A stretch of 59,242 nt of DNA, the filler included, from Platydemus manokwari (lineage: Eukaryota), in assembly GCA_037951405.1 (NCBI GenBank). It is 5 parts of 5 records of this genome, joined end to end, with 100 filler letters (N's around TTAATTAATTAA, not from the genome) between each part and the next. Parts side by side here need not be neighbours in the genome. Positions count along the whole stretch, not along the records: positions 9,875 to 22,758 come from JBBMOY011926939.1; 4 more parts are not named here. The stretch is one strand, 5' to 3'. Below the pieces are notes generated by a model that worked only from the letters and a program-made list of their open reading frames with translations, searched no databases and was not told the origin of the DNA. The position numbers and the translations under genes were made by a program. Of this stretch, positions 9,875 to 57,080 are shown one piece after another; the first letter of the stretch is position 1; the number at the start of each line of letters is the position of its first letter.

Positions 9875-9894
9875 ATAATAATAATAATAATAAC

Positions 9895-9926
<32 letters not shown>

Positions 9927-9948
9927 GAAGAATAATAATAATAATAAT
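9875..9948 (+). repeat. (AAT)n microsatellite at a contig start
   Basis: Direct reading. Confidence 0.95.
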
Positions 9949-12900
9949 CCCTATTCCACAGAATTTATTTCAATTATAATCGAATTAGACTAAAATAATG
10001 TTTTTGCTGCATCTCTACAAGTTACTTATTCTTTATCATATATCACTGGATATCAATAGTTCATTATTCTAATGAATAAAACCAAAACAATGTTCAAATG
10101 AACTGAACTGACCCCAAAGGAGTTGATGTCAATATAAGATAAATTATCTCAATGGCGATTATTTATTAGAAAAATATGTTTACATATCTTTCGGTAAGAA
10201 AATTTATGATTAAAAAGGGAAAAAAATATTTCCAACAGCTGCCTATTGAGTCGAATTTCATTTTTAAAAAATTCTATTAGTTAATTAATGGTTAAAACAT
10301 TTTATCAGCTATAAAAATAGTCAATGTGGAAAATTAAAATCTATCAGACTAATCGACGTTGGAAAGTTATCAGTAGATATTGTTTTTTTTCGCTCATATA
10401 TTGCTGTGAGCTGGTTTATCGGAATTCAAACATTGCAGCTGTTTAGGGGATTTATATGGCAAACAGTTATTTTGATAATTAATATTTTAATCAGCCAATA
10501 TGAATTTGTAGATTAATGAAAAAATCTTTAATAAGAAATTTTTTAATTTAAAATAATCCAAGATTGATTAGTATGGATTATGTTTTTATATTGTTGTCTA
10601 TTGGGAGTTCTGGTTGGAGAGATGTAGTAATAGATTTACTGTACTTAACAGATTTGTTTGACCTTATTTATCATCCATCAATTATCTTTTAACTAGTCTC
10701 AGACAATATAAAGAGTAAATTAAGAATTTATAATTTTATATTTTATTTCGAGGCTTCCTTAAAAATTAAAACGAGTTTATTTTATTAGAATGTTTTTATT
10801 TTTATATCGAGATTTAATTATGAGTAGTTAAATTTATCATTATTTTCATGTGATGTATGTTAAGAGTAATAATAAATTAATGCAGAAATAATAGTATAAT
10901 TATATAAAATATAATCACACAGTAAAGCATTTTAAATTCAGATTTGTAATTCGTCAAATTGAATTGATAGATAAAACGAAGGAAATACTTTTGTAAATTA
11001 TTTGTTTGTTCAAAAACTATGATTTTATTCATTTAATTTCATTATACTAAAATACTTTTTAAAATTCGAAGTTTAAACGTAATTAAATTTCGATTAAATA
11101 AATGTTGTTATAGTGAATATTTATTGTTTATTTTGATACTGAAACACTCAGGAAATCAATAAAACTAAAATTGACCACAAGATACAATTAGTGAAACTCA
11201 AGGACAAACATTTCAAGAATAAGAATAATCACTGAAACAATTAAAATGATCACATAAGAGTTATCGACCATAAACGGCTGGCAATTCTTCCAGAGAGTCG
11301 ACGCTTTTTATAGACTGTATTGTGTTTGCTTGATTACAATCTTAAAGTTTTGCTTTCCACTTATTAGAATCATTTATCTTATTTTACTTAATTAGTAGAT
11401 TTTCTTTGTCGATTGAATATCATAGCTTATTGGGGGATATTGATTCGAAAGTCTCTAATCACCTCTGGCACGGATGTCTACCATTCTGAAGGCTGTTTTA
11501 AAGGTTCTTATTTAGGTTTTTTATTCTTTTTGTTTCGCGATTTACATTTGTGGTGGCTCCTTGAAATTATAAATCGCAATTTATTTAAGATAATCTTAAA
11601 AGTATCTTTGAAACACAAATAATATTATTTAAAAAAACGTAAAATATAAAATCTACTTTATTTGAATGTATTTGTCTATTATTAGAAAACGAATTGATTA
11701 TACTTTTGAAATAACATATTGTGTTCAACAAATATATTGACAGCCGGTAATTAATTACTATTTCGTAAAAGCTAATTCATGATATACATGGAGAAATGTG
11801 AGGGAAATAATTTGATATCAATTTGACACAACTCTGTGAGTACACTCGGTTTAGAATATAATTGCTATTCATAAATTTATTTTTAATTACAATTTTTCAG
11901 CATTTGTTTTAATTAAAAAAAAACAATTCTTTTGTTGAATTCCATTGAAAAATAACGAAAAATATCCAGAACCAAAAATATAGTTTGAATGTGTATAAAT
12001 ATGTGTCGATTTCCTGACATATCAAATGGGAATATTTTTTCAAGATTCAATAACTCACAATACTCATTTGCATTTTAAGTGGCTCGAGGAAAAACTCTAC
12101 ACATAAAACTGTTTTCAAATTATGTTAATGGGGAAATCTAAAAATATAACTGCAAATATTTCGTGAAACTTGCTGAAATATTATGTTTCATATGTTTCTT
12201 TGAAAGCTGATGACTTTTAAATTGTTGTGTTAACAAGCTTTGGGATTTGACAGTTAGAAGTAATGAAAAGATTTGATGACAATCTTCGATATTTTCATTA
12301 AAAAGTGGATATAGGAAGTTATTATTATTATTAAACCATTTATGGTTTATAAAACCCGTGTAAATTATAAGTTTAAGACCTCTATATAATAATTATAAGA
12401 AATTTCAATAATATTTATTGATTGTGACTCTAGTATATTTATGTAAGATATTGATTGATAGTTTGTTGAGTGTTATTTTTATATCATGTAATTGTATCAC
12501 TTATCGGATTATAAGTGAATTTGCTGACATACCCAAATTACGCAATGCTTTGTAAATAATGCACACTAAGTTCATTTTATGAGTTTTTGAAATAGTGCCA
12601 ATAGAAAAATTGTCAAAAATCATTTTGTTGCAGAGAACTTGGCATAAATTTGATGAAAGGAGCTCAAGTGTCAAAAATTGACTTTAGAAAATATATTTTC
12701 CAGGGTGTATTTTTCAACTGAACAACCCCGCTACCGGTGATACAGTAAATAAATAAAGCTAATGATGGCTATTTAATTTATTAATTGAATACTTAACTCG
12801 TATATTAAACTGGTTGGTAAATTACATGAGAATGAATGAAAATAAATTCCATAAAACGTGCTAATAACTTGTTTTGATTTTGATGTCAACTCTACTTTTA

Positions 12901-15313
12901 TAAGTTCTCTTACAACTTTAGGATAACAATCAATCTTAACAGTAATTACTTGACCTCATAGAATTGTTTTTAGAAGATTTTTCTTACAAACAATGCTTCT
13001 CGATGATATGGTTCAACTACTGTGTTTGCTTAACGCTAGTACCGTAGCTGTTTGATAGCGAAACGGTTACGCCTTAAATGCATGTTATTTCTGCGTGGCC
13101 ATGTAACAGCTTTATCAGTTTAATTTATTGTTAACCGCGTATTTTGCCCTTTTTATTATTTTTTGCTATTTTTCGTTTAACCATTATTGTTATTTAATAA
13201 TTAACGATTGTTCCATGACAACCTTTTCTTATTAAAATACAAGTCAATGTTAAATAAAGGTTTTTCCACATTAATAAATTAAATCATTATAAATTAAACA
13301 TGTTATAATTATAATAAACACATAATAATTAACTCAGTACAGTTTAAACTATTAAAGAAAATACATAGAATACGAATAAGTCGGTATAAGTTATTATTTC
13401 ATCACGAAAATTATTATTGCTATTGCTGTTGTTCAATGTTGATTTCTATTTGCTGTCCTATTCTGCCGTTTGATTGCTAATGCGATCGAGCAATTTATAT
13501 ATTTAAAAAGTAATACATGATTTGGTATTAGGGGATAACGTGTTGTATTTTTTATGATGTATAAATTATTTTTGGGACCATCTCCCCAAATAATAAATAC
13601 ATTTGCTTTTTTACTAATTTTGAAAATTATCATTGGTCTTGGTATTGAAGATATAATTTTTTATTGATTTTTTCAAATTTGTATGCGAGATCTTTTGAAA
13701 TGTATCTATAATTTGAAAAGTTTTAGTTTTAATTTGATTTTAAAGAATATAAATGACTTTTCCAACAATAAAATTTTACTAGTTCAGTGATGACATCTAA
13801 AAAGTCATCAATTAAAAACTTCAATAAATTATTTAGAAAGTTATTTTCATTTTATTAGATATTTTTAAATTACCATCAAGACCTAAAAATATCATCTAAT
13901 TAAATTTTTTGTGGATTTTATATCGAAAATCGATCTTTTGGGATTTGTTTATTTTTAATTTTATTTCGTATCTTTAATACTTCAAAAAAAAATAATTTTA
14001 TGACAAAATTTATGAGACACTAAAAGAAACTAAACGACCATCTTGTCGACAGGGATAGTAAAACACAATGAATCCTATTGCAATACCGGATATTTTCCCT
14101 AATTGAATCACTAACGTAAAGGGAATTTAAAATAGCCTCTTGGTTGATTTTATCAACTCTATTTCAGTGATGATGAGAATAGACTCGTTTGAGGCTAATT
14201 ATAGTTTGTCGGTGACAGTCGATTTCTATGGATGTTACTTTTTATATTGAAATTGATGAGATGTTTTTATATTTCAATATTCTTAATTATATTTGAAGTC
14301 CCAATTTCCGCTTTAGACATTTCATAGAAAATATTTGCGCATCGATGTGTGATTGAGTAAAAAAAATTTAACATGAAGCATATATAAAACATGCAATCAT
14401 CTTATTAGACAATTATATGCCCACCTTTTTATTATTTTTATCCCGTTGTGAAGAAATATTTTTAAAGATTTTTCAAAGTTTTGAATGGACTTCTGTAAAT
14501 AGGCTCAATTAAAGTCCAATTTACGAACAAATATGATTAAAACAATTAACTACCTTTAAACTCTTATTAAAACTTGATATCAGGTTTTCAAAAAGATTAT
14601 TATTACTATAAATTACTATGCTTAATCCGACAATATTCAAATAACCGTTTATCTAAACGTATATTTTACCGAAATAGGTTGATGGTTCATCACTTTCATG
14701 TTCTGCCACGATAGTGACGATTCTGTACTCCTGGTAAATGAAAGCACTTTAGCTTTTTTTCCAACTAGCCTTTCAAAAAATAATTCAACAATCAAATTAA
14801 ACTCAATCACACGTAAACAACTTGTTCGGTAAATCTTTTTTTATTAATTAAACTATTGGACATGGTTTAATCCACCGGAAAAGTGGATACAAAAAGATGA
14901 TTATTTTAAAAAATGTCGATTTTACAATAAGAATTATTTTTCTTGATTCTTTTACACAGAAAGAATACATTTATAATTTAACAGTAAAATATGATTTAAT
15001 AAGACAATATTTTCCCTGATATAAATATTTTGACCAAAATTGAAAAGTGTTTGCTGGTTAGATCTCATTGACAGTAATTCCAATTAATAGTAAATCCCAG
15101 TGAAAGCAAGCCCCAGAACTCTTGATTGCAATCATATTAAATATGATAATTATCGCATGGTGTTTTCATTCGATGAAAATATATTAGAAGTTATATCTTG
15201 AAAACATTAATTTCATTAATGAGTATTTTAGGCTACAATAGTATGAAATATTATGATGTCAAAATATTATAATTGATAATAATAATATTAATAATTATAA
15301 TAGTAATAATAAT

Positions 15314-15915
15314 TGTAAGCTGTTACTTTTTTAAAATGCACACATTGAAAGCGAGCTGAAAAGTCCCGACACCAAATTATCTTTCACTTAAAATGATTCA
15401 AACAAATTATTCTTTTATGAAAATACAATTTTAAAATTGATCAAATTTCATCTTATAATAAATCCCCACATGACATTTTGTTTAAAACCTTTGATTTTCT
15501 AAATTTTTGAGTATCTCTGTATCAAATCTATAGATAAAATTCTCCATATTATAATTTATATTTCTTCTGTACTTTATATAATCTCTATATGTTCTTTATA
15601 ACATATCCATCTCTTCTTTATATCTTCACTTTTTCGCCGTTAAATATTCTCTAAAACTTTGCTATATCTTCTTTACATCTTTTCTATATCTTCCTTTTTC
15701 TCTACTATATGTTCATGCCAGAGACATTATCATAATAGAATCCAAATGTGTAGTCGCCATGTAAGCCGCTGCTAGTTTAAAAAGCACGCATTGAAAACTA
15801 ACTGAAAAGTCACGACACCAAATTATCTTTTAATTACAATGATTCAAACAAATTATTCTTTTATGAAAATACAATTTTAAAATTCTTCAAATTTTATTTT
15901 GTAATAAATCCTCAC

Positions 15916-15916
<1 letters not shown>
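15314..15916 (-). mobile_element. TRIM-like miniature non-autonomous LTR retrotransposon, copy 1
   Basis: Two 157-bp direct repeats (15314-15470, 15760-15916), each TGT...ACA. The reverse complement of 15751-15759 is TGGCGACTA (PBS), directly adjacent to the 5' LTR. The interior is non-coding and purine-rich on the minus strand. ATAAT lies on both flanks, within an (AAT)n tract. Confidence 0.8.

Positions 15917-15963
<47 letters not shown>
15917..15963 (+). repeat. (AAT)n microsatellite flanking TRIM copy 1
   Basis: Direct reading. Confidence 0.95.
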
Positions 15964-16521
15964 TTTGATATAATTCGCAAAAGGAAACTCCCTAGCGCAT
16001 TCAAAACACCTTTTTTTTAATTATTGGCGATTTTTGATTTATTTCAGCTTAATGTACTTTTAAATATATTTTGTTTTCATTTATTCACTCCACTGCACAT
16101 TTGGAAATTACTCATTTTAAATTTGTTTGTCTTTGTTTTACTTTATAATTTATTTATTTTCTTCGTTATGATTTGTATTTTTGATATTTATCAAGTTTTC
16201 GATATTAAAAGTATAATTACAACCATGATTCATTAACGATAATTTTCTTATTTCTTTTTATTTATTTATTATTAATTAATATTTTAAGTGCTACGAATAA
16301 TCGTTCCCCACTACATCAATAAAACATTTTCATCAGTATCTCTATTTGAACTGGTCTCTGTCACTTGTTTTTCACAATAATGATTGATCAGGTGCAGTGT
16401 TTATAGTTATCCGGAACGATATTTGATAAATTTTTGTACTCCTACATCAATGAATTATTTATCTCTATGGCAATGAGAATCTTTATTTATTATACTTTAA
16501 TATTATAGTTTTTGTTATTAA

Positions 16522-16799
16522 CATGTTGACGGACAGTAGGAACAAATGAAGTCCGAAATTTAACACTATATGTGCGTACTTAAGCTGCAAGTCGTGTAAT
16601 AAGTGGAAAACAAAAGTCAACCAAAAGAATAGTTTCCAAAACATGACACTAGTCTTCTATTTGTACGACGGTAAATGCACATTTGTGCAGCTATAGCCGC
16701 ATTGTCCAAAAAAACCGTTTCGTTTTAGACGGCTATTGCTGTCATGCCACACAGTGAACTTCGCTTTGACGGTTTAAGACCCAAGTGTCCGTCGACGTG
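16522..16799. mobile_element. piggyBac-type MITE (278 bp) with TTAA target-site duplication
   Basis: TTAA (16518-16521) + CATGTTGACGGACA ... TGTCCGTCGACGTG + TTAA (16800-16803). The 14-bp TIRs have 2 mismatches. Non-coding. Confidence 0.8.
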
Positions 16800-18379
16800 T
16801 TAACAAGGATGATTCGTTTTGTTCGAGTACTCGAAACAAGAACCGATAATCAAATATTTCCAGTCTATTATAATGTGATTGATTATCGCGTGATCGATAC
16901 ATTTAAATTACTGACCAGCTATAAGTGTGTGCCTTAAAATTTAAATTTAATTATGAAACAAATAATTAAAAATGAAAAGTATTTTAAAGGCATAATTTTA
17001 TATTTATAAATCGTAACAAAAAATAATAAATCAGACATTTGATCGATTTCTAAGCGGACATTTTATTGGTCCATATTTTCTGTTTTTCAATATCCAACGG
17101 ATGCGGTATTCCAGATCTAGAATTGTAATAGAAATTCGATAAAAATTCGGATCCATAATTTCATTAAATCTTTCAAATTCAATAAAATGATTTAAAAAAT
17201 TTAAAATAAAATGTTCGCGTTTTAGTGTTGACTTCTCTGCCACATAATAATGCTAATAAAAACTCCATTTTATATAATAACATATCATTCTCATATCGAT
17301 ATTCGACTAATATCACTAAAACGTTTTTATAGTACTTTAAAAATCGTGGGCAAGTTGGATTGGCTAGTGTTCTAACAAACCAATACAATGTGATTTACAT
17401 AAGACAACTAAAATAAACTCACGATTTCAGCTTGATTAATAATCGTTGACAATAAAACCATTACTAGTTATAAGTGAATCTTGATATCTCATTTCCTTCT
17501 TTTCAGTTTCGAAATAATTTAATGAATTTTTAAATAATTTTCATCAGTATTTTAGTGAATCGATTTAATATCATGGTACGGGTGGATATACATATTTACT
17601 TCGACTGTGTAAATATTGGAAATAATCTACTTGCTTGGTATTTAGAACAATAAGAAACGATAAAAAATCATGAGACGCCTGTTCGTGATTAATAAATTAT
17701 TTAAGTATATTTTCATAATATAAGAACTATGTCAGTGCGTTTGTGAAGATCATAGAAAAATCAACAATATCAACATAAGTGTCGCCTCATCTATCAATAT
17801 GTAACAATTGCTTTCCGGTGATTGAACCTTTTATTGTTTTCCATTTTGGGACCATTTTCCATCATTGATTTGATTATATTTTTGAACTCTTATTGAAGTG
17901 TGGGCTGTTTTCCTTTGTAAAGTGGCTCCTAGGTTTACTGTAGATTGCGACTGCTTACTTATATCAACAATTTGGAAGCTTCAATTAATAAGAATTCCTA
18001 ATATTATCATATACTTATAACAGACTAGTTCTGATTTTCTGCTTGTATATTTGGTCTCAAATTGTAAAATTATTCTCATAAATGGTTGAAAGTTGAGACA
18101 GGATATTGAAAAAATATATAACAAAATTATCTATAAATATTTGATAGTATTTTAGGTTGTAACCCAGATAACTTCTAAACCTATGATAATTTTACATATA
18201 ATTGTATTGAAATAACTCAAAATTGTGTTTACTTTTGGTTAGGTTTTGAGCTCAAACAAGTGTTTATTGTTAAAATTACAAGATCATTACAATTAAAAGA
18301 TTTTGTACGCTATGCTCTCTAAACTCTACCGAATTGATTTTACTATTAAAAATTAATAAAATACAAAATATGGTCATCT

Positions 18380-18620
18380 AATGTAGCCGAAACCGGATAA
18401 TATCACTTTATTCAAAAATGGTTTAAATTTTTGCTAGCGATTACTAGCAATTTATTTTAATTTTTATCGATTAATGTTCAAATAGCGTTTACATGAAACC
18501 CTCATCCACTTCAGCCTTCAAGGATTTCTTTTGAATTATTCCAAATACTACTTCTTTACAACCATAGTACTTTTATACAAGGTACAATTTACTCATCAGC
18601 TGGAAGAAGCAGTATGCTGT
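18380..18620 (+). mobile_element. Gypsy RT C-terminal relic
   Basis: PDNITLF and ETLIHFSLQGFLLNYSKYYFF resemble YLDDILIF and L..L...GL.LN..KC.F. Confidence 0.35.
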
Positions 18621-19696
18621 ATTTCACTCTACAGTGCCATCCATTTTCAGGACTGGTTTGTTTAAAAATTTTTGAAATGATTAAATTTAGTTTAAAGTAA
18701 ATTTAATTGGTTAGATTGATGAGTAAAGGCATCATGTAATTTACAAAACAACCTCATTAAAATTTATAAAAAATTAATAAAGTTAGATTGATAGCTAGAA
18801 TTCTACTAATTCACTATCGAACCATTTTCTTACCATTATAAATTTTATAAATAATTAATCTAAGTTGTCAAGATCAATACAGAACATAGTAAATAATAAG
18901 ATCGAATATCCGCTTCTAAATTAATAATTAACACGAATTTCAATAACTCATTAATTTCGAAGACATAGGGTTCCATTCGATATTCGAAATGATGGGTAAA
19001 CTAATAAGAGAAACCTAATTGCCATCACAGCATATGTTAACTGGTAGCGGGTACGAATTTTGAAGCTCTGAAATCTTATCTCGTGTCGATGCATTAAAGT
19101 AATAAACTAATATTCTGATTAATACCATATTCAGAATCCCAATGTTGTTCAAAGTAATTTGAAAAATAGTATTGTGGTCAAGTACAAAAATTGCTACTGG
19201 ATAGTCAAATAGAATCATGTGTGATTTAAAAGGTTTTGCTTGTTCTTTTCTGTTAGCGGTAGCTATATCATTCAAATTATTGGAATTAATTAAATGAGTC
19301 ATTAAAAATGCAGTAGAATAGATTTCGAATACACAAATTATTTAACAAATGTTCTAGTTATCAAAACATAACCAATAGTTGGTTTAAATAATGTATGCCT
19401 TGATTAAAATAATTTTAAATTTAAAAATGTTTTGAATTATTTAAATTCTTTTAAAAATTAAAATTAAATATTTGATTTTCAAAATTAATATCCAATGTTT
19501 AATCTTTAAAATCATTAATCCACAATTTCGATCAGATTTTTAATTAAATTTAAATTTATTTGTTGAGTATTGATTATCACATGTAAACACCTAAAAATCT
19601 TATTGATGTAAAATTGGCATTTCATGTTCAATTTATTTTACTGAAAAGAAATAAAATATTACTTTCGATCTCACAAATAACAAAACATTAACGTAA

Positions 19697-20189
19697 TTAC
19701 TTGATTGGTTTGTCGATATCATCTTCACAAGAATATTTATTCATCCCATTTAGCTTTTTGTTGAGTTGTTGTGTTTTCTCTAGATTCGTCATAATGTGTC
19801 TCGACATATGAGGTACCATTTGTAAAAGTCCTGGAATACAAAACCCTTTACTTTGCTGAAGAGCTTGTAATTTGGCTTGTGCTTTGATTTGATAATCTAA
19901 ACCCGAATAATATTAAAGTTTTCTCAACATATTTCCTTTGTAACGGATTCAATTATTCAATGATGTTATCAAAACCATTGACTAAAACTAATTGTAGGAG
20001 AAATACTACATGTGCTTGTAAAAAGTGGACTTGAGTTCTAATTAACAAATAAATGATTTATGTAATTGAGAATTTTATGTCCTGCCCGATACTTATAAAT
20101 GGAAAGGAGTATGAGATCGATCTATCGGTGAACTAACTTATGAAACTGTTAATGATTTTTTCGTCGAGCTCTTTTTTTACTCTTTCAAT

Positions 20190-20241
<52 letters not shown>

Positions 20242-21858
20242 GTAGTAATAATAAAAGTAATAATAATAGTAATAATAATAGTCATCATCATAAATCAATA
20301 CCATTACATAACCAATCAAAATATTCATACCTGATAATACATTTATTTTCAATTTTGTTTGCATTTGATTTTTATCTTTCAATTCAGGTGACAATCGATT
20401 TATGGCTGAAGCGTTTTTCGTTGCAATAGACATACTGGGAGAACGCAGTGATTCATATCTGGTAGATATTCTTGATGGCCTTTCCAATCCACTTACTGAC
20501 GACGCACGACTAAAATGTTTAGCAATTCATCAAAATCCCGACAAATTATTTGTTTTCACCTATCGGTTTCTTCATAATCAAGAGCGTCTAATAGGCATTT
20601 TAATTTCTCTTCTGCTGCCATTCGAGTTTGCAAATCACCCCATTCCTTGATGTCTTGGCTTGACATTTCAATTTTGATAGTTTGAGATGAAGCCTGTTTT
20701 GACATGCTCTGTTTAGATGTTACCGTTGATTTTGCGGAACAAGTTGTTGCAGTAGAAGGAAGATTTTGTAACAGTTCTTTCAGTTGATTAACAGCTTCAA
20801 TGAGTCCTTTTCTAGCTTGCTGAGTGTTGTCTTTTATTTCTTCCAGCTGTCGCTCTAATGATGATATTTGATCGGCAAGAGAATTGTTATTATTCTCCAT
20901 GATCTAACATCAAACCCAAAGAAAGTGAAATAATAATCTTTTTCTTTTTCTTACCTGAATTTCATTTCTTTTCTTTTCCATATCGATTTTCATGTTTTCA
21001 TTTTCATCAGCCATTGCCTGAATGATTTCAGTTTCCTTCTTATAGATTTCCATAATATCTTTCTGCTCTTGGTCTTTGATAATTAACAAATGAAGAAGCT
21101 AAAATTCGATAAAAGATCATCACACAAAATATATAAATCAACATAAAATATAGCGGGAAAAAATGAAATGAATTAGATTTATTATGGATATTATTATGCT
21201 AGTAAACGATAGAGAGCTTTAGATTCATCAATGGCTTCTATTTCTCATCTGCCTTGTATTTCATTCAAAAAATCCCATTAACTGGGAGTATGACAATAAC
21301 ACCAAATTATTGTGGAAATAATCAGGGTAAGAAGTTGTTTTTATCAATCTATTGAAAACAAATCCATTGGATTACTTTGGTGTGTGACAAATTTTTGCTT
21401 GCTAACTCCGTACACGTTTGGTCAAGCTCTTTAATTCGACAAAATGATGTTTTCACTTTCGCTTTCAATTGATCATTTTCTTGCATCAATTCAATATTTT
21501 TATCGTCCATTTTCGTCAGTTGAGTTCGAATAGAAACGTTTTCTCGTATCGTTCGTTTCGTGGTGTCGGATGTCTGTTTTTGAGAAATTTTCCGGAAATC
21601 TGCTGCCACCTGCAAAGTAAATGAATTAAAATAAACCAGATGATAAACGAATGTTGGATTCGTTCTTTACCGAATTGATTCTTGCTACGATTTCTTTCTT
21701 CAATCGATCGTGTTGGTTTGCACATTTCATTTGGATTGATTCGAGAATCTTTTCATGGTCGGCTTTTTTATCGGCCAACACCTGTTCAAGTTGGGCATAC
21801 TCTTCGAGATATTTTTCTTTTTGATTTTTAAATTCTTCCAGGGCGGCTAATTTGGCAC
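19697..21858 (-). CDS. CFAP157: Cilia- and flagella-associated protein 157-like, 5'-partial
   Basis: Phase-consistent exons 21858-21671, 21609-21376, 21098-20955, 20903-20560, 20509-20331 and 19896-19697. AKLAALEEFKNQKE..DRLKKEIVARINSVAADFRKISQKQTSDTTKRTIREN matches the CFAP157 core. No upstream exons were found before the linker at 22759. The last exon and stop are less certain. Confidence 0.85.
20192..20280 (+). repeat. (AAT)n microsatellite in a CFAP157 intron
   Basis: Direct reading. It generates the spurious poly-Ile and poly-Tyr ORFs. Confidence 0.95.
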
Positions 21859-22758
21859 CTAATTGAGAGTTATTTATTAATAAAAACTTTTAATATTGAT
21901 ACAATGGGAAAATCCTATTGATGTTTATTTGGAAATAACACCTAAGAGTTTAATTTCATTTATTATATTCAAAATTAATAGCTAGAAAATCGAATATTTA
22001 AAATAAATGGCTATGGGGCGATTCTTACCCTTGTGTTAATAGATTTTTTAGAAATTTGGAATATTTTCTAAAATAATTCTATAATATAAAAAAAATAGAA
22101 TTAATAATGTTATATTTTATTTTAACAGAACATATGCAAGAGTTACAAAGGTCCACTGATGAAATCAATGAGAATTTATTAAAGAATTTGTATTTCAAAT
22201 AAGCTTTCTAATAGAATCATCGGGGCTAATTTATCAATATGCTGAATGTGTTTGACATTCAAAAAGCTAATAACGGTCGTACAAATTCTAATAATCACTG
22301 AAAAATCATTGCAGAAAGTGGTAGTGAAAATTTCTTCAGAAATTATTTATGAAATATATAGGAGAAAAACTTTGAGAGCAAAAATTAAATAAGGCGTCAA
22401 TAATTATCTGGATAACTGAGAGAGCTTTACATTGATGATAGAATGCTTATTAGAAGATATTGAAACAATCTTTTAATCTTTTTTTATCAGATAATATCTT
22501 CCAAAAATATTATTTATTTATTTATTCATTACTTGTATCTTGAAATGGATGAATGATTTACGATTAATCAGCTAGTTATTAGCATTATTATTAAAAATAA
22601 TATTTTTAATATTATTTTTAATATAATTAATAATAATAAAATTATTAAATATATTATTATTGCTATTATCGACATTATCATTGTTATTATTGTGATTATT
22701 AAGTAAAAAAAATAAATAATAATAATTATTATTATTATCCACTACTATTATCTTTATT

Positions 22759-26079: not shown

Positions 26080-26556
26080 TGTGATCATTTCAAATTGAAT
26101 GGAAATTTTTAAAGGTTTGATTTAGTATCCAATTTAATTTTATTTAAAATTATATTAATTTATTTATATAATTGTATTGAAACATATAATTTGTTGTCGG
26201 GTCTAACGGCTAACTTGACGACCAATCATCTGGATTCGATTATGATAAGATCAATGTCTGAAAATTATGGAAAAGGAGAAGTATTTTGTGACTACATAGT
26301 GAATATATAAACAAGATATAAACAAGATAGAAGAATTAGAATTTTTATGTAAATAAATATGTACAGCATTCTATATATAATGTCAATTAAGAAGGCAAAA
26401 AAAATCAAAGATTTTAGAATGACGGGATGTAAGCATTTGTGATTGAATTATAATTTTTAAAGATTTAATTTTATATAAAATTTCATTAATTTATTTTAGT
26501 AATTGTATTTAGATACATAATTCGATCCGTGTCTTATAAAATAGTAGCGACTAACA
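26080..26556 (+). mobile_element. TRIM-like element, copy 2 (more decayed)
   Basis: LTRs at ~26080-26215 and 26428-26556 (ending ...AAAATAGTAGCGACTAACA). Decayed PBS TGACGACC at 26216. The interior CATCTGGATT..ATGGAAAAGGAGAA..AAGATATAAA is shared with copy 3. Purine-rich AGAATGACGGGA precedes the 3' LTR. Flanks are ATAAT/AAAAT. Confidence 0.72.
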
Positions 26557-56000: not shown

Positions 56001-57080
56001 TTTCTTATTATTTTGGATTGACAAACTTTCTTTTAATTTTGTTTAAATTCCACTATTTCATTTCGGGAACATTTATTACAACCCATTTGTTATTGCAAAC
56101 AATAGTTTTCAATGAAAATGGTATAAAAATTGTATAAATCAATTTAATGTGGAATAGAAAATGAATTTTTGTAATTTTTTATGAATATAAATATCTTAAA
56201 TATTTACTTGTGATGACATTTCGTGCACTGTATCTGTAAGCCGCTACTATTTTTAAAACACGCATCGAAAACGAACTGAAAAGTCATGACACCGAATTAT
56301 TTAAACAAATTAATATAATTTTATATAAAATTAAATTTTACACAAAATTATATTTAGAAAATTTTTAATTCATTTTAAAATCCTCACAACCCCCTTTCGT
56401 TAAAAATCATTGATTTTCTTTGTATTCTTTATTGACATTGTATCGATTAATTTTTATATTTATCTATATAAAAATCTCTAGTTCTTCCATCTTTTTATAT
56501 CTTCTTTATATATTTTCTATACAGTCTCAACATCTTTCTCCTTTTCCATGATTTTCAATCATTGATTTTCTCAGAATCCAATCCAGATGCCTAGTCGCCA
56601 TGTAAGCTGCTACTATTTTCTAAAACACGAATCGAAAACGAACTGAAAAGTCGTGACACCGAATTATTTAAACAAATCAATATAATTTTATATAATATCA
56701 AATTTTATACAAAATTGTATCTATAAAAATATTTATTCCATTTAAAATGCTCCTTACATCTATGACAGCAGCTAACATATATAATATTTAACTCCTTTTT
56801 CATAGATTTTATTTTCTAAATATATATAATTGTTCATTGATTTTATTAAAATTTAATATTTGATAAATTCTATTTATTTATTTTTGAAAAATTATCATTG
56901 AATTACAATTGATTATAATAATCAATCTAGATTATCGATGCATCAATGCACCAGAATCAAGATTATATTACCGAAATGACTTTGGATTCAGAATCGGTTC
57001 AAGCAAGTCAATTTTCATCAACATTTCTAAATGACAAAGGCAATAAATTGAAATCAAAACAGTCTACTTTGAAATTCAAG
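50078..57080 (+). CDS. rdgB: Membrane-associated phosphatidylinositol transfer protein (rdgB / PITPNM, Nir), internal DDHD-domain exons; partial at both ends
   Basis: Phase-consistent exons 50078-50263, 51850-51913, 52023-52337, 54605-54753 and 56931-57080. They encode [44 protein letters not shown] and [46 protein letters not shown], the DDHD signature of PITPNM1/2. Confidence 0.92.
51085..51515 (-). mobile_element. Dispersed repeat family B, copy 2 (internally deleted; rdgB intron)
   Basis: Shares direct identity blocks with 29225-29835. Confidence 0.6.
52598..52830 (-). mobile_element. Gypsy RNase H relic in an rdgB intron
   Basis: Frame-shifted HLIGTE..LET and EYMIYAQK resemble YLIG..F.LETDH...Y.I.Y. 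Confidence 0.3.
56235..56758 (-). mobile_element. TRIM-like element, copy 3 (in an rdgB intron)
   Basis: LTRs at 56235-56388 and 56601-56758. PBS TGGCGACTA (reverse complement of 56592-56600). Polypurine tract GAAAGGGGG (reverse complement of 56390-56398) one base from the 3' LTR. No clear TSD. Confidence 0.8.

What the first reader, a model, noticed from the sequence alone, without database searches (positions are those of the whole stretch)
15314..15916. A miniature LTR retroelement (TRIM-like) family present three times on three different contigs
Seen: three ORF-less elements at 15314-15916 (-, 603 bp), 26080-26556 (+, 477 bp) and 56235-56758 (-, 524 bp). They share one architecture: 130-158 bp direct repeats with TGT..ACA-type ends, TGGCGAC immediately after the 5' repeat (TGACGAC in copy 2), a 210-290 bp purine-rich interior with GAAGATATA-like motifs, and a purine tract before the 3' repeat (clearest in copy 3, GAAAGGGGG). 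Copies 1 and 2 have ATAAT/ATAAT and ATAAT/AAAAT flanks. Established: LTR-PBS-PPT-LTR without coding capacity defines TRIMs. TGGCGAC is complementary to the 3' end of some Arg/Ser tRNAs used by Gypsy elements. TRIMs are mainly known from plants, with few animal cases (harvester ant, taeniid tapeworms). Inference: three copies in 59 kb imply a high-copy family, probably mobilised by the Gypsy elements whose relics fill this window. Copy 1 versus copies 2 and 3 look like two subfamilies. A possible fourth, very decayed interior lies at ~1260-1390 in the NSUN4 intron.
Basis: partly seen in the sequence, partly recalled or inferred. Interest (0 to 1): 0.75.

Follow-up and report, generated by a model that had tools for sequence, protein, structure and literature searches.

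The report
Old miniature LTR retrotransposon (TRIM) copy
This 603-base stretch is a dead, ancient copy of a small non-coding "hitch-hiker" retrotransposon (a TRIM) that occurs thousands of times in this AT-rich animal genome. It is a well-supported but ordinary mobile-element annotation.

Summary
Window 15314-15916 (minus strand) is a 603-bp element with no ORF. It has two 157-bp direct repeats, 87% identical, with TG..CA ends, around a 289-bp purine-rich interior.

Evidence from the whole family shows it is a true LTR-type retroelement.
- The genome search gave 4,621 first-look candidates. The sampled loci hold discrete LTR-interior-LTR units, many solo LTRs and a few three-LTR forms.
- 12 of 26 insertions have perfect 5-bp target-site duplications, against 1.1% in cross-locus controls.
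- The 12 nt after the 5' LTR (TGGCGACCACGC) complement the 3' end plus CCA of a host tRNA-Arg(ACG) gene. The match stops sharply at position 13.
- A 12-13-nt purine tract abuts the 3' LTR in 16 of the 18 copies that include this junction.

The window copy is old and broken. Its LTRs have diverged by K2P 0.14, its primer site matches at 10 of 12 positions, and its purine tract has decayed.

The LTRs contain no 5S, tRNA or ribozyme module.

It differs from the ant PbTRIM and the tapeworm ta-TRIM, which both use tRNA-Leu and make 4-bp or 4-5-bp duplications. TRIMs are already known in several animal groups, so this is a new member of a known kind.

The parts
15760..15916 (-). 5' LTR, 157 bp, begins TGTGAGG and ends CTTACA
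   Evidence: Direct-repeat family D2. Pair alignment shows 87% identity. Homologous LTRs are found genome-wide.
15748..15759 (-). Primer binding site, directly abutting the 5' LTR. It reads TGGCGACTACAC here, matching the tRNA-Arg(ACG) 3' end plus CCA at 10 of 12 positions. The undecayed form, seen in other copies, is TGGCGACCACGC.
   Evidence: The tRNA genes are in L068 and L071.
15733..15743 (-). Leader motif, GGATTCGATTC in most copies and decayed here. It can pair with T-arm nucleotides 52-62 of the tRNA. It may be an extended primer contact or a relic of tRNA read-through; this is speculative.
   Evidence: Copy listing. Duplex energy is -14.2 against -6.0 kcal/mol for shuffles, but the effect is generic to tRNA T arms.
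15471..15759 (-). Non-coding internal domain, 289 bp, 65% purine
   Evidence: It is homologous over its whole length to the interiors of other copies.
15559..15714 (-). Degenerate 11-nt periodic purine-rich repeats (GAAGATATA-like) inside the interior
   Evidence: Tandem Repeats Finder reports periods of 11 and 22. The motif scan finds about ten units at multiples of 11 nt.
15471..15483 (-). Decayed polypurine tract abutting the 3' LTR. Other copies carry an all-purine tract of 12-13 nt such as AAAGAAAGGGAGA.
   Evidence: 16 of 18 copies have at least 11 purines in the last 14 nt; this copy has 9 and one other has 10.
15314..15470 (-). 3' LTR, 157 bp, begins TGTGGGG and ends CTTACA
15917..15921 (-). 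Upstream copy of the 5-bp target-site duplication (ATTAT), inside a perfect (ATT)16 microsatellite at 15916-15963
   Evidence: The 5-bp length is established on 26 family insertions.
15309..15313 (-). Downstream copy of the 5-bp target-site duplication (ATTAT), inside an imperfect ATT/ATA array at 15272-15313

Best explanation
The stretch is one old, inactive copy of a canonical TRIM, a terminal-repeat retrotransposon in miniature. [quoted passage not shown]

Inferred life cycle:
1. The element is transcribed from the 5' LTR to the 3' LTR.
2. The RNA is packaged in trans by the proteins of an autonomous LTR retrotransposon.
3. Host tRNA-Arg(ACG) anneals to the 12-nt site next to the 5' LTR and primes minus-strand DNA.
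4. The purine tract next to the 3' LTR primes plus-strand DNA.
5. The partner's integrase joins the TG..CA ends into a 5-bp staggered cut.

Later LTR-LTR recombination produced solo LTRs, and unequal exchange produced three-LTR forms.

Shown here: the anatomy, the match to a host tRNA, the 5-bp duplications, the copy number, the solo LTRs, and the age of the copies.

Inferred, not shown: transcription, trans-mobilisation, and the identity of the partner.
For: 1. Structure: 157-nt LTRs, 87% identical, with TG..CA ends. The interior is 289 bp and no ORF exceeds 38 aa.
2. Dispersed high-copy family:
- First-look candidates number 4,621 for the whole element, 3,157 for the LTR and 920 for the interior.
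- The junction 17-mer (LTR end plus primer site) occurs 175 times, against 0 for the reversed control.
3. Organisation: the element-seeded loci are mostly discrete LTR-interior-LTR units in unique flanks. Three contigs (L006, L013, L097) carry LTR-int-LTR-int-LTR forms. About 15 of 28 LTR-seeded loci are solo LTRs.
4. Target-site duplications:
- 12 of 26 are perfect 5-mers and 18 of 26 match at 4 or more of 5 positions.
- Cross-locus pairings give 1.1% perfect, and the outer 5-mers give 0 of 26 (binomial P about 2e-17).
- Duplications of 4 or 6 bp do not fit.
- The duplications flank full elements, solo LTRs and one three-LTR form.
5. Primer site:
- A host tRNA-Arg(ACG) gene ends ...CCTGGCGTGGTC-G and is followed by a T-run (L068; a full gene with the same acceptor stem is in L071).
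- Its complement with CCA is TGGCGACCACGC.
- In 30 copies, positions 1-12 match in 18-28 of 30. Positions 13-18 match in 0-4 of 30.
6. Purine tract: a tract of 12-13 purines abuts the 3' LTR; 16 of 18 copies have at least 11 purines in the last 14 nt.
7. Age: the LTRs within one element have diverged by K2P 0.07-0.28 (median 0.18; 0.14 for this copy). This is generally less than the divergence between copies, which are about 71-81% identical. That pattern is expected if the two LTRs were identical at insertion.
Against: - No autonomous partner with matching LTR ends or primer site was found, so trans-mobilisation is inferred only.
- No RNA data set holds the locus, so transcription is untested.
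- This particular copy has a decayed primer site and purine tract, and its flanking duplication sits in a microsatellite.
Those loci were chosen by similarity to this copy, so counts and ages are rough.
- Comparison with Dfam or Repbase was not possible.
Confidence: 0.92

Rival explanations
1. It is a Pol III-driven TRIM (the 'TRIMp3' type, such as Cassandra, Helenus or Ajax). Such elements carry a 5S- or tRNA-derived promoter in the LTR. Alternatively it is a retrozyme-like element with ribozymes in its LTRs.
For: Its size of 603 bp is within the TRIMp3 range (PMC10886601). The LTRs are AT-rich with no obvious Pol II signals that I could verify.
Against: A permissive Rfam scan (E up to 1) of 15100-16150 on both strands found no 5S, tRNA, hammerhead or other family. 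ARAGORN-type tRNA features are absent.
Confidence: 0.03
2. The units are independent internally deleted remnants of a larger autonomous or LARD-type LTR element, not a family that amplified as a miniature.
For: Some copies have shorter or longer interiors: L085, L103 and L083, and a near-total deletion in L025.
Against: Nearly all sampled full units share the same interior of about 260-290 bp from end to end. None of about 55 loci shows an LTR next to coding sequence. Independent deletions would not repeat the same junctions.
Confidence: 0.04
3. It is a satellite or minisatellite with a period of about 446 bp, or a local segmental duplication. In that case it would not be a transposon.
For: Three-LTR forms exist in L006, L013 and L097. 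The interior holds 11-nt periodic repeats.
Against: No sampled locus has more than three LTRs, although each locus includes up to 1.5 kb of flank on each side. The units lie in unrelated flanks and carry 5-bp duplications. Solo LTRs carry duplications too, and the L006 three-LTR form is bounded by a perfect TCCAC duplication.
Confidence: 0.01

Closest known systems
TRIMs in general (Witte et al. 2001, as cited in PMC6934838 and PMC10886601)
   Same: Total length under 1 kb. Terminal direct repeats of 100-250 bp with TG..CA ends. A tRNA-complementary primer site after the 5' repeat and a purine tract before the 3' repeat. No coding capacity. Solo LTRs and tandem multi-LTR forms.
   Different: Nothing structural. 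This family is very AT-rich (about 26% GC) and has an 11-nt periodic purine-rich interior.
PbTRIM of the red harvester ant (PMC3532108)
   Same: An animal TRIM of similar size (480-781 bp) with similar LTRs (152-184 bp). It is abundant, has many solo LTRs and inserts in AT-rich DNA.
   Different: PbTRIM makes 4-bp duplications, commonly ATAT, and its primer site of about 15 nt matches tRNA-Leu. Many of its copies are young. Here the duplications are 5 bp, the primer site is 12 nt for tRNA-Arg(ACG), and all sampled copies are old. Direct sequence comparison was not possible.
ta-TRIM of taeniid tapeworms (PMC4558846)
   Same: An animal TRIM with solo LTRs, occasional tandem forms and a short primer site (9 nt).
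   Different: In ta-TRIM the primer site matches tRNA-Leu and sits 4 nt from the LTR. Its LTRs are about 198 bp, its interior about 590 bp, and its duplications 4-5 bp. It has a candidate partner ('lennie') and is massively expressed. None of this is shown here.
Helenus, Ajax and Cassandra (TRIMp3; PMC10886601)
   Same: Miniature LTR elements with a primer site and a purine tract. Ajax, and the fungal and plant Helenus, make 5-bp duplications.
   Different: Those carry a tRNA- or 5S-derived module in the LTR. None is detectable here. Animal Helenus makes 4-bp duplications.
biv-TRIM of bivalves (PMC6934838)
   Same: An animal TRIM with solo repeats and tandem forms.
   Different: biv-TRIM lacks a recognisable canonical primer site. 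This family has a clear 12-nt site.

Membership tests
TRIM (non-autonomous LTR retrotransposon) | Two terminal direct repeats of about 100-250 bp with TG..CA ends | tested here: met
   157-nt repeats, 87% identical, TGTG...TTACA. The same termini occur in other copies.
TRIM (non-autonomous LTR retrotransposon) | Shorter than about 1 kb and without coding capacity | tested here: met
   603 bp, and the longest overlapping ORF is 38 aa. Other copies measure about 540-620 bp.
TRIM (non-autonomous LTR retrotransposon) | A primer binding site complementary to the 3' end of a host tRNA, next to the 5' LTR | tested here: met
   12 nt complement tRNA-Arg(ACG) plus CCA from the same genome (L068/L071). 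Across 30 copies the match ends sharply at position 13. The window copy matches at 10 of 12.
TRIM (non-autonomous LTR retrotransposon) | A polypurine tract next to the 3' LTR | tested here: met
   A tract of 12-13 purines abuts the 3' LTR; 16 of 18 copies have at least 11 purines in the last 14 nt. It is decayed in the window copy.
TRIM (non-autonomous LTR retrotransposon) | Target-site duplications of fixed length around dispersed copies and solo LTRs | tested here: met
   5 bp. 12 of 26 are perfect against 1.1% in the control, P about 2e-17. About 15 solo LTRs among 28 loci.
TRIM (non-autonomous LTR retrotransposon) | Mobilised in trans by an autonomous LTR retrotransposon that shares LTR ends and primer site | not testable with these tools
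   No partner was seen in about 55 loci. The 18-nt form of the primer site occurs only twice in the genome, in an unrelated short repeat.
PbTRIM (ant) | 4-bp duplications and a tRNA-Leu primer site (PMC3532108) | tested here: not met
   5-bp duplications, with 4 bp not fitting. The primer site matches tRNA-Arg(ACG).
ta-TRIM (taeniid cestodes) | A tRNA-Leu primer site 4 nt from the LTR, with LTRs of about 198 bp (PMC4558846) | tested here: not met
   The primer site abuts the LTR, it matches tRNA-Arg, and the LTRs are 157 nt.
TRIMp3 (Cassandra, Helenus, Ajax) and retrozymes | A 5S- or tRNA-derived sequence, or a hammerhead ribozyme, inside the LTR | tested here: not met
   No Rfam match at E up to 1 over 15100-16150 on both strands.
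   No Gypsy element was retrieved. ORFs of 60 aa or more in the piece gave no retroelement domain. From general knowledge, 5-bp duplications occur with Copia, BEL/Pao and some Gypsy integrases, so the partner's class stays open.

The most novel reading that the evidence does not exclude
The family may be a lineage-specific animal TRIM that binds its primer in two parts. The first part is the 12-nt site for the tRNA-Arg(ACG) acceptor end. The second, four nucleotides further on, is a conserved 11-nt motif that pairs with the tRNA T arm (10 of 11 pairs if G-U is allowed), as described for Ty1, Ty3 and some retroviruses. Its 5-bp duplications would point to a partner different from the Gypsy elements proposed for other animal TRIMs. 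That partner may now be extinct.
Probability: 0.15. Interest if true: 0.45.

Novelty: new member of a known kind. Interest (0 to 1): 0.3.

Why it matters
The family provides a clean, fully documented TRIM for an AT-rich animal genome. It has LTRs, a 12-nt tRNA-Arg(ACG) primer site, a purine tract, 5-bp duplications, solo LTRs and tandem forms.

Practical value:
- It allows several thousand otherwise unclassified repeats to be masked.
- It gives dated insertion markers.
- It defines the signature (LTR ends, primer tRNA, duplication length) by which an autonomous partner could be recognised in a better assembly.

It adds to the short list of animal TRIMs with a clear primer site. It does not change what is known about how such elements work.

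Tried and rejected
- tRNA search, first attempts. The first 30 tRNA loci from the Rfam tRNA search gave no match beyond 8 nt. A pattern that demanded a fully Watson-Crick acceptor stem found no tRNA. The true gene has two G-U pairs, and one copy is cut by a contig end. A pattern anchored on the T loop found it.
- Sequencing runs. One DNA-type run held the locus and no RNA run did. Its contigs break inside the repeat and only show a depth spike over LTR 15769-15825. They give no information on transcripts or on presence/absence alleles.
- Organism identity was not recovered. Two protein-atlas look-ups were uninformative. A bacterial-looking PurM ORF from a tRNA locus had only 37-45% identity to GTDB genomes. 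I ran no further search on this.
- A literature search for the 12-nt primer site returned only unrelated plant marker primers.
- Partner search. ORFs next to family LTRs gave DUF5743, zinc-finger, SDR, WW and kinase hits, and no gag or pol. The 18-nt primer-site form occurs twice, in an unrelated short repeat.
- The conservation profile along the element is nearly flat (0.61-0.89 per 15-nt bin). It does not single out cis elements.
I re-ran it from references. In that run the tRNA slice carried two extra trailer bases, which shifts the T-arm window by 2 nt. This does not affect the primer-site claim.
- Only copies were compared.

Full report
**Observation**

On the minus strand, window 15916-15314 reads as follows:
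- a 157-nt repeat (15916-15760);
- a 289-nt interior (15759-15471);
- a second 157-nt repeat (15470-15314).

The two repeats align without gaps at 137 of 157 positions. Both start TGTG and end TTACA. The interior begins TGGCGAC directly after the first repeat.

The interior is 65% purine (69% in its core). It holds about ten GAAGATATA-like 9-mers spaced at multiples of 11 nt. The longest ORF touching the element is 38 aa.

The flanks are ATTAT/ATTAT on the element strand. However, the element sits between a perfect (ATT)16 array (15916-15963) and an imperfect ATT/ATA array (15272-15313). This pair of flanks therefore proves nothing on its own. No second copy lies in the piece 9875-22758.

The other copies it lists lie outside my piece and were not examined.

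**A dispersed, high-copy family**

The assembly is 911 Mb in 1.99 million contigs, and this piece is about 26% GC.

| Query | First-look candidates |
|---|---|
| Whole element | 4,621 |
| LTR alone | 3,157 |
| Interior alone | 920 |

The scored matches to the whole element were 71-81% identical.

I mapped the LTR and the interior separately on the retrieved loci.
- The element-seeded loci are mostly single LTR-interior-LTR units in unrelated flanks.
- Three contigs (L006, L013, L097) carry LTR-interior-LTR-interior-LTR forms.
- No locus has a longer array.
- Among 28 LTR-seeded loci, about 15 are solo LTRs.

The 17-mer made of the LTR end plus the 12-nt primer site occurs 175 times in the genome. 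Its reversed control occurs 0 times. Only 2 of my 30 sampled junctions keep that exact 17-mer. This suggests on the order of a thousand or more junctions, but the extrapolation is very rough.

Public contigs from one run show a strong depth spike over the best-conserved LTR segment, 15769-15825.

**Target-site duplications**

I read the termini of 13 full or three-LTR elements and 13 solo LTRs.

| Comparison | Result |
|---|---|
| Perfect 5-bp duplications | 12 of 26 |
| At least 4 of 5 matching | 18 of 26 |
| Cross-locus pairings, perfect | 1.1% |
| Next 5-mers outward, perfect | 0 of 26 |
| Registers of 3, 4, 6 and 7 bp, perfect | 2, 1, 0 and 0 of 26 |

The binomial P is about 2e-17.

Perfect examples include TTTAC, TCCAC (around a three-LTR form), ATATT, TACTT, ATGAA, AGGAG, GCCAC and TCTGT. 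About half of the pairs being imperfect is expected, because the copies are old.

Solo LTRs that carry duplications are the signature of LTR-LTR recombination within an inserted element.

**Primer binding site**

The 30 junctions between a 5' LTR and an interior share a conserved start.

The host tRNA took several attempts to find.
- The first set of tRNA genes gave only 8-nt matches, to tRNA-Arg(CCG) and tRNA-Arg(TCG).
- A pattern anchored on the T loop then found a tRNA-Arg(ACG) gene ending ...CCTGGCGTGGTC-G, followed by a T-run (L068). That gene is cut by its contig end.
- A complete gene with the same acceptor stem, containing two G-U pairs, but with a T discriminator, is in L071.
- A second Arg(ACG) isodecoder has a different acceptor stem (L072-L074).

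With CCA added, the complement of the L068 tRNA end is TGGCGACCACGC.

Across the 30 copies, positions 1-12 agree with this in 18-28 of 30. Positions 13-18 agree in 0-4 of 30. The primer site is therefore 12 nt long and abuts the LTR.

Many of the deviations are transitions at the two CpG sites (TGGTGA, CCATGC, CCACAC). The window copy has 10 of 12 matches.

**Polypurine tract**

A tract of 12-13 purines, for example AAAGAAAGGGAGA, lies directly before the TG of the 3' LTR. Sixteen of the 18 copies that include this junction have at least 11 purines in the last 14 nt. In the window copy only 9 of the last 14 nt are purines, and one other copy (L024) has 10.

**Age**

In 25 LTR pairs, the divergence within one element is K2P 0.07-0.28, with a median of 0.18. 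For this copy it is 0.14. This is generally lower than the divergence between copies, which fits LTRs that were identical at insertion and then decayed neutrally.

No young pair was seen, so the sampled part of the family looks extinct. The conservation profile along the element is nearly flat.

The mutation rate of this organism is unknown. With generic arthropod-like rates, K = 0.14 would mean some millions to a few tens of millions of years. This is an inference only.

**What it is not**

- A permissive Rfam scan found no 5S, tRNA, hammerhead or other RNA family in or around the element. It is therefore not a Cassandra, Helenus or Ajax type element, and not a retrozyme.
- It is not a satellite. 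The copies are dispersed and carry duplications.
- The copies are not independent deletion products. The same interior recurs from end to end.

**Partner**

I found no autonomous element.
- ORFs of 60 aa or more in the piece gave no retroelement domain.
- ORFs near family LTRs in other loci gave DUF5743, zinc-finger, SDR, WW and kinase hits.
- The 18-nt version of the primer site occurs only twice in the genome. At the one site I could read (L063), it lies in a short unrelated repeat.

From general knowledge, a 5-bp duplication and an Arg primer fit several superfamilies. One Nasonia Gypsy family is reported to use tRNA-Arg (PMC10886601).

**A speculative extra**

Four nucleotides after the primer site, most copies carry GGATTCGATTC. 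This can pair with tRNA positions 62-52 at 10 of 11 positions if G-U pairs are allowed (my reading).

The duplex energy of leader nt 13-34 with the T-arm region averages -14.2 kcal/mol, against -6.0 for shuffled leaders. Arg tRNAs take the first six places among 38 tRNAs, the Arg(ACG) genes ranking 2-5.

Three caveats apply.
- T arms are similar in most tRNAs (median -11.4 kcal/mol).
- The 30 leaders are related to each other, so they are not independent.
- My tRNA slice carried 2 extra trailer bases.

The motif may be a relic of read-through copying of the primer, or an extended primer contact. I do not rest any claim on it.

**Comparison with known families**

All defining features of a TRIM are met except trans-mobilisation, which cannot be tested with these tools.

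| Family | How it differs from this one | Source |
|---|---|---|
| PbTRIM (ant) | 4-bp duplications, tRNA-Leu primer, many young copies | PMC3532108 |
| ta-TRIM (tapeworms) | tRNA-Leu primer site 4 nt from the LTR, longer LTRs and interior | PMC4558846 |
| biv-TRIM (bivalves) | no canonical primer site | PMC6934838 |
| Helenus, Ajax, Cassandra | small-RNA module in the LTR | PMC10886601 |

TRIMs are now reported from Hymenoptera, cestodes, bivalves, fishes and nemerteans (PMC6934838, PMC10886601). An animal TRIM is no longer a surprise.

I could not compare the family with Dfam or Repbase.

**Verdict**

This is a real and well-supported TRIM family, and the window holds an old, dead copy of it. 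It is a new member of a known kind, of modest interest.

Noticed in passing
L063:749-867, L069:1419-1535 (also G000:C1162125:76-93): A short repeat of about 119 bp. It begins with the 3' half of tRNA-Arg(ACG), roughly from the anticodon stem to the end, with the CCA encoded in the DNA. About 80 bp of shared sequence follows. An encoded CCA means it was copied from mature tRNA. It shows no similarity to the TRIM.
   Followed up: partly
L039:205-1278, L047:36-1316, L045, L042, L049, L051: Several small contigs that carry tRNA genes have long uninterrupted AT-rich ORFs that look bacterial. An example is a PurM-like 358-aa ORF, at most 45% identical to any GTDB species representative. The assembly seems to include an unplaced AT-rich bacterium, which could be a symbiont or a contaminant.
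   Followed up: partly
L068, L071, L072-L074: The genome holds two tRNA-Arg(ACG) isodecoders with different acceptor stems (3' strand CGTGGTC against CAGGCTC). In the first type, one gene has a G discriminator and another has a T. Only the first type matches the TRIM primer site.
   Followed up: yes
window 15916-15963 and 15272-15313: A perfect (ATT)16 microsatellite abuts the 5' LTR, and an imperfect ATT/ATA array abuts the 3' LTR. The element appears to have landed in a trinucleotide array, or to have seeded one. Two other copies (L011, L020) also have AT-rich, repeat-like 3' flanks; L011's is an AAT trinucleotide run.
   Followed up: no
window 21349-21615 (-) and 20556-20900 (-): Two ORFs of 88 and 114 aa have weak coiled-coil hits (Shugoshin_N at E 3e-5; DivIVA-like), all below the Pfam cut-offs. 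They may be exons of a host gene about 4.6 kb from the element.
   Followed up: no
L082:3-1037 (+): A 345-aa open frame matches DUF5743 (E 1.7e-28). It lies antisense next to a truncated family copy consisting of a 5' LTR plus 113 bp of interior.
   Followed up: partly
L006:281-1271, L013:137-1170, L097:521-1426: Three-LTR, two-interior forms of the family. L006 is bounded by a perfect TCCAC duplication. L013 has none. The 5' LTR of L097 is truncated.
   Followed up: partly
L025:516-609 (same contig as L090): An even smaller derivative. The LTR end and a decayed primer site join almost directly to the last few tens of nucleotides of the interior.
   Followed up: no
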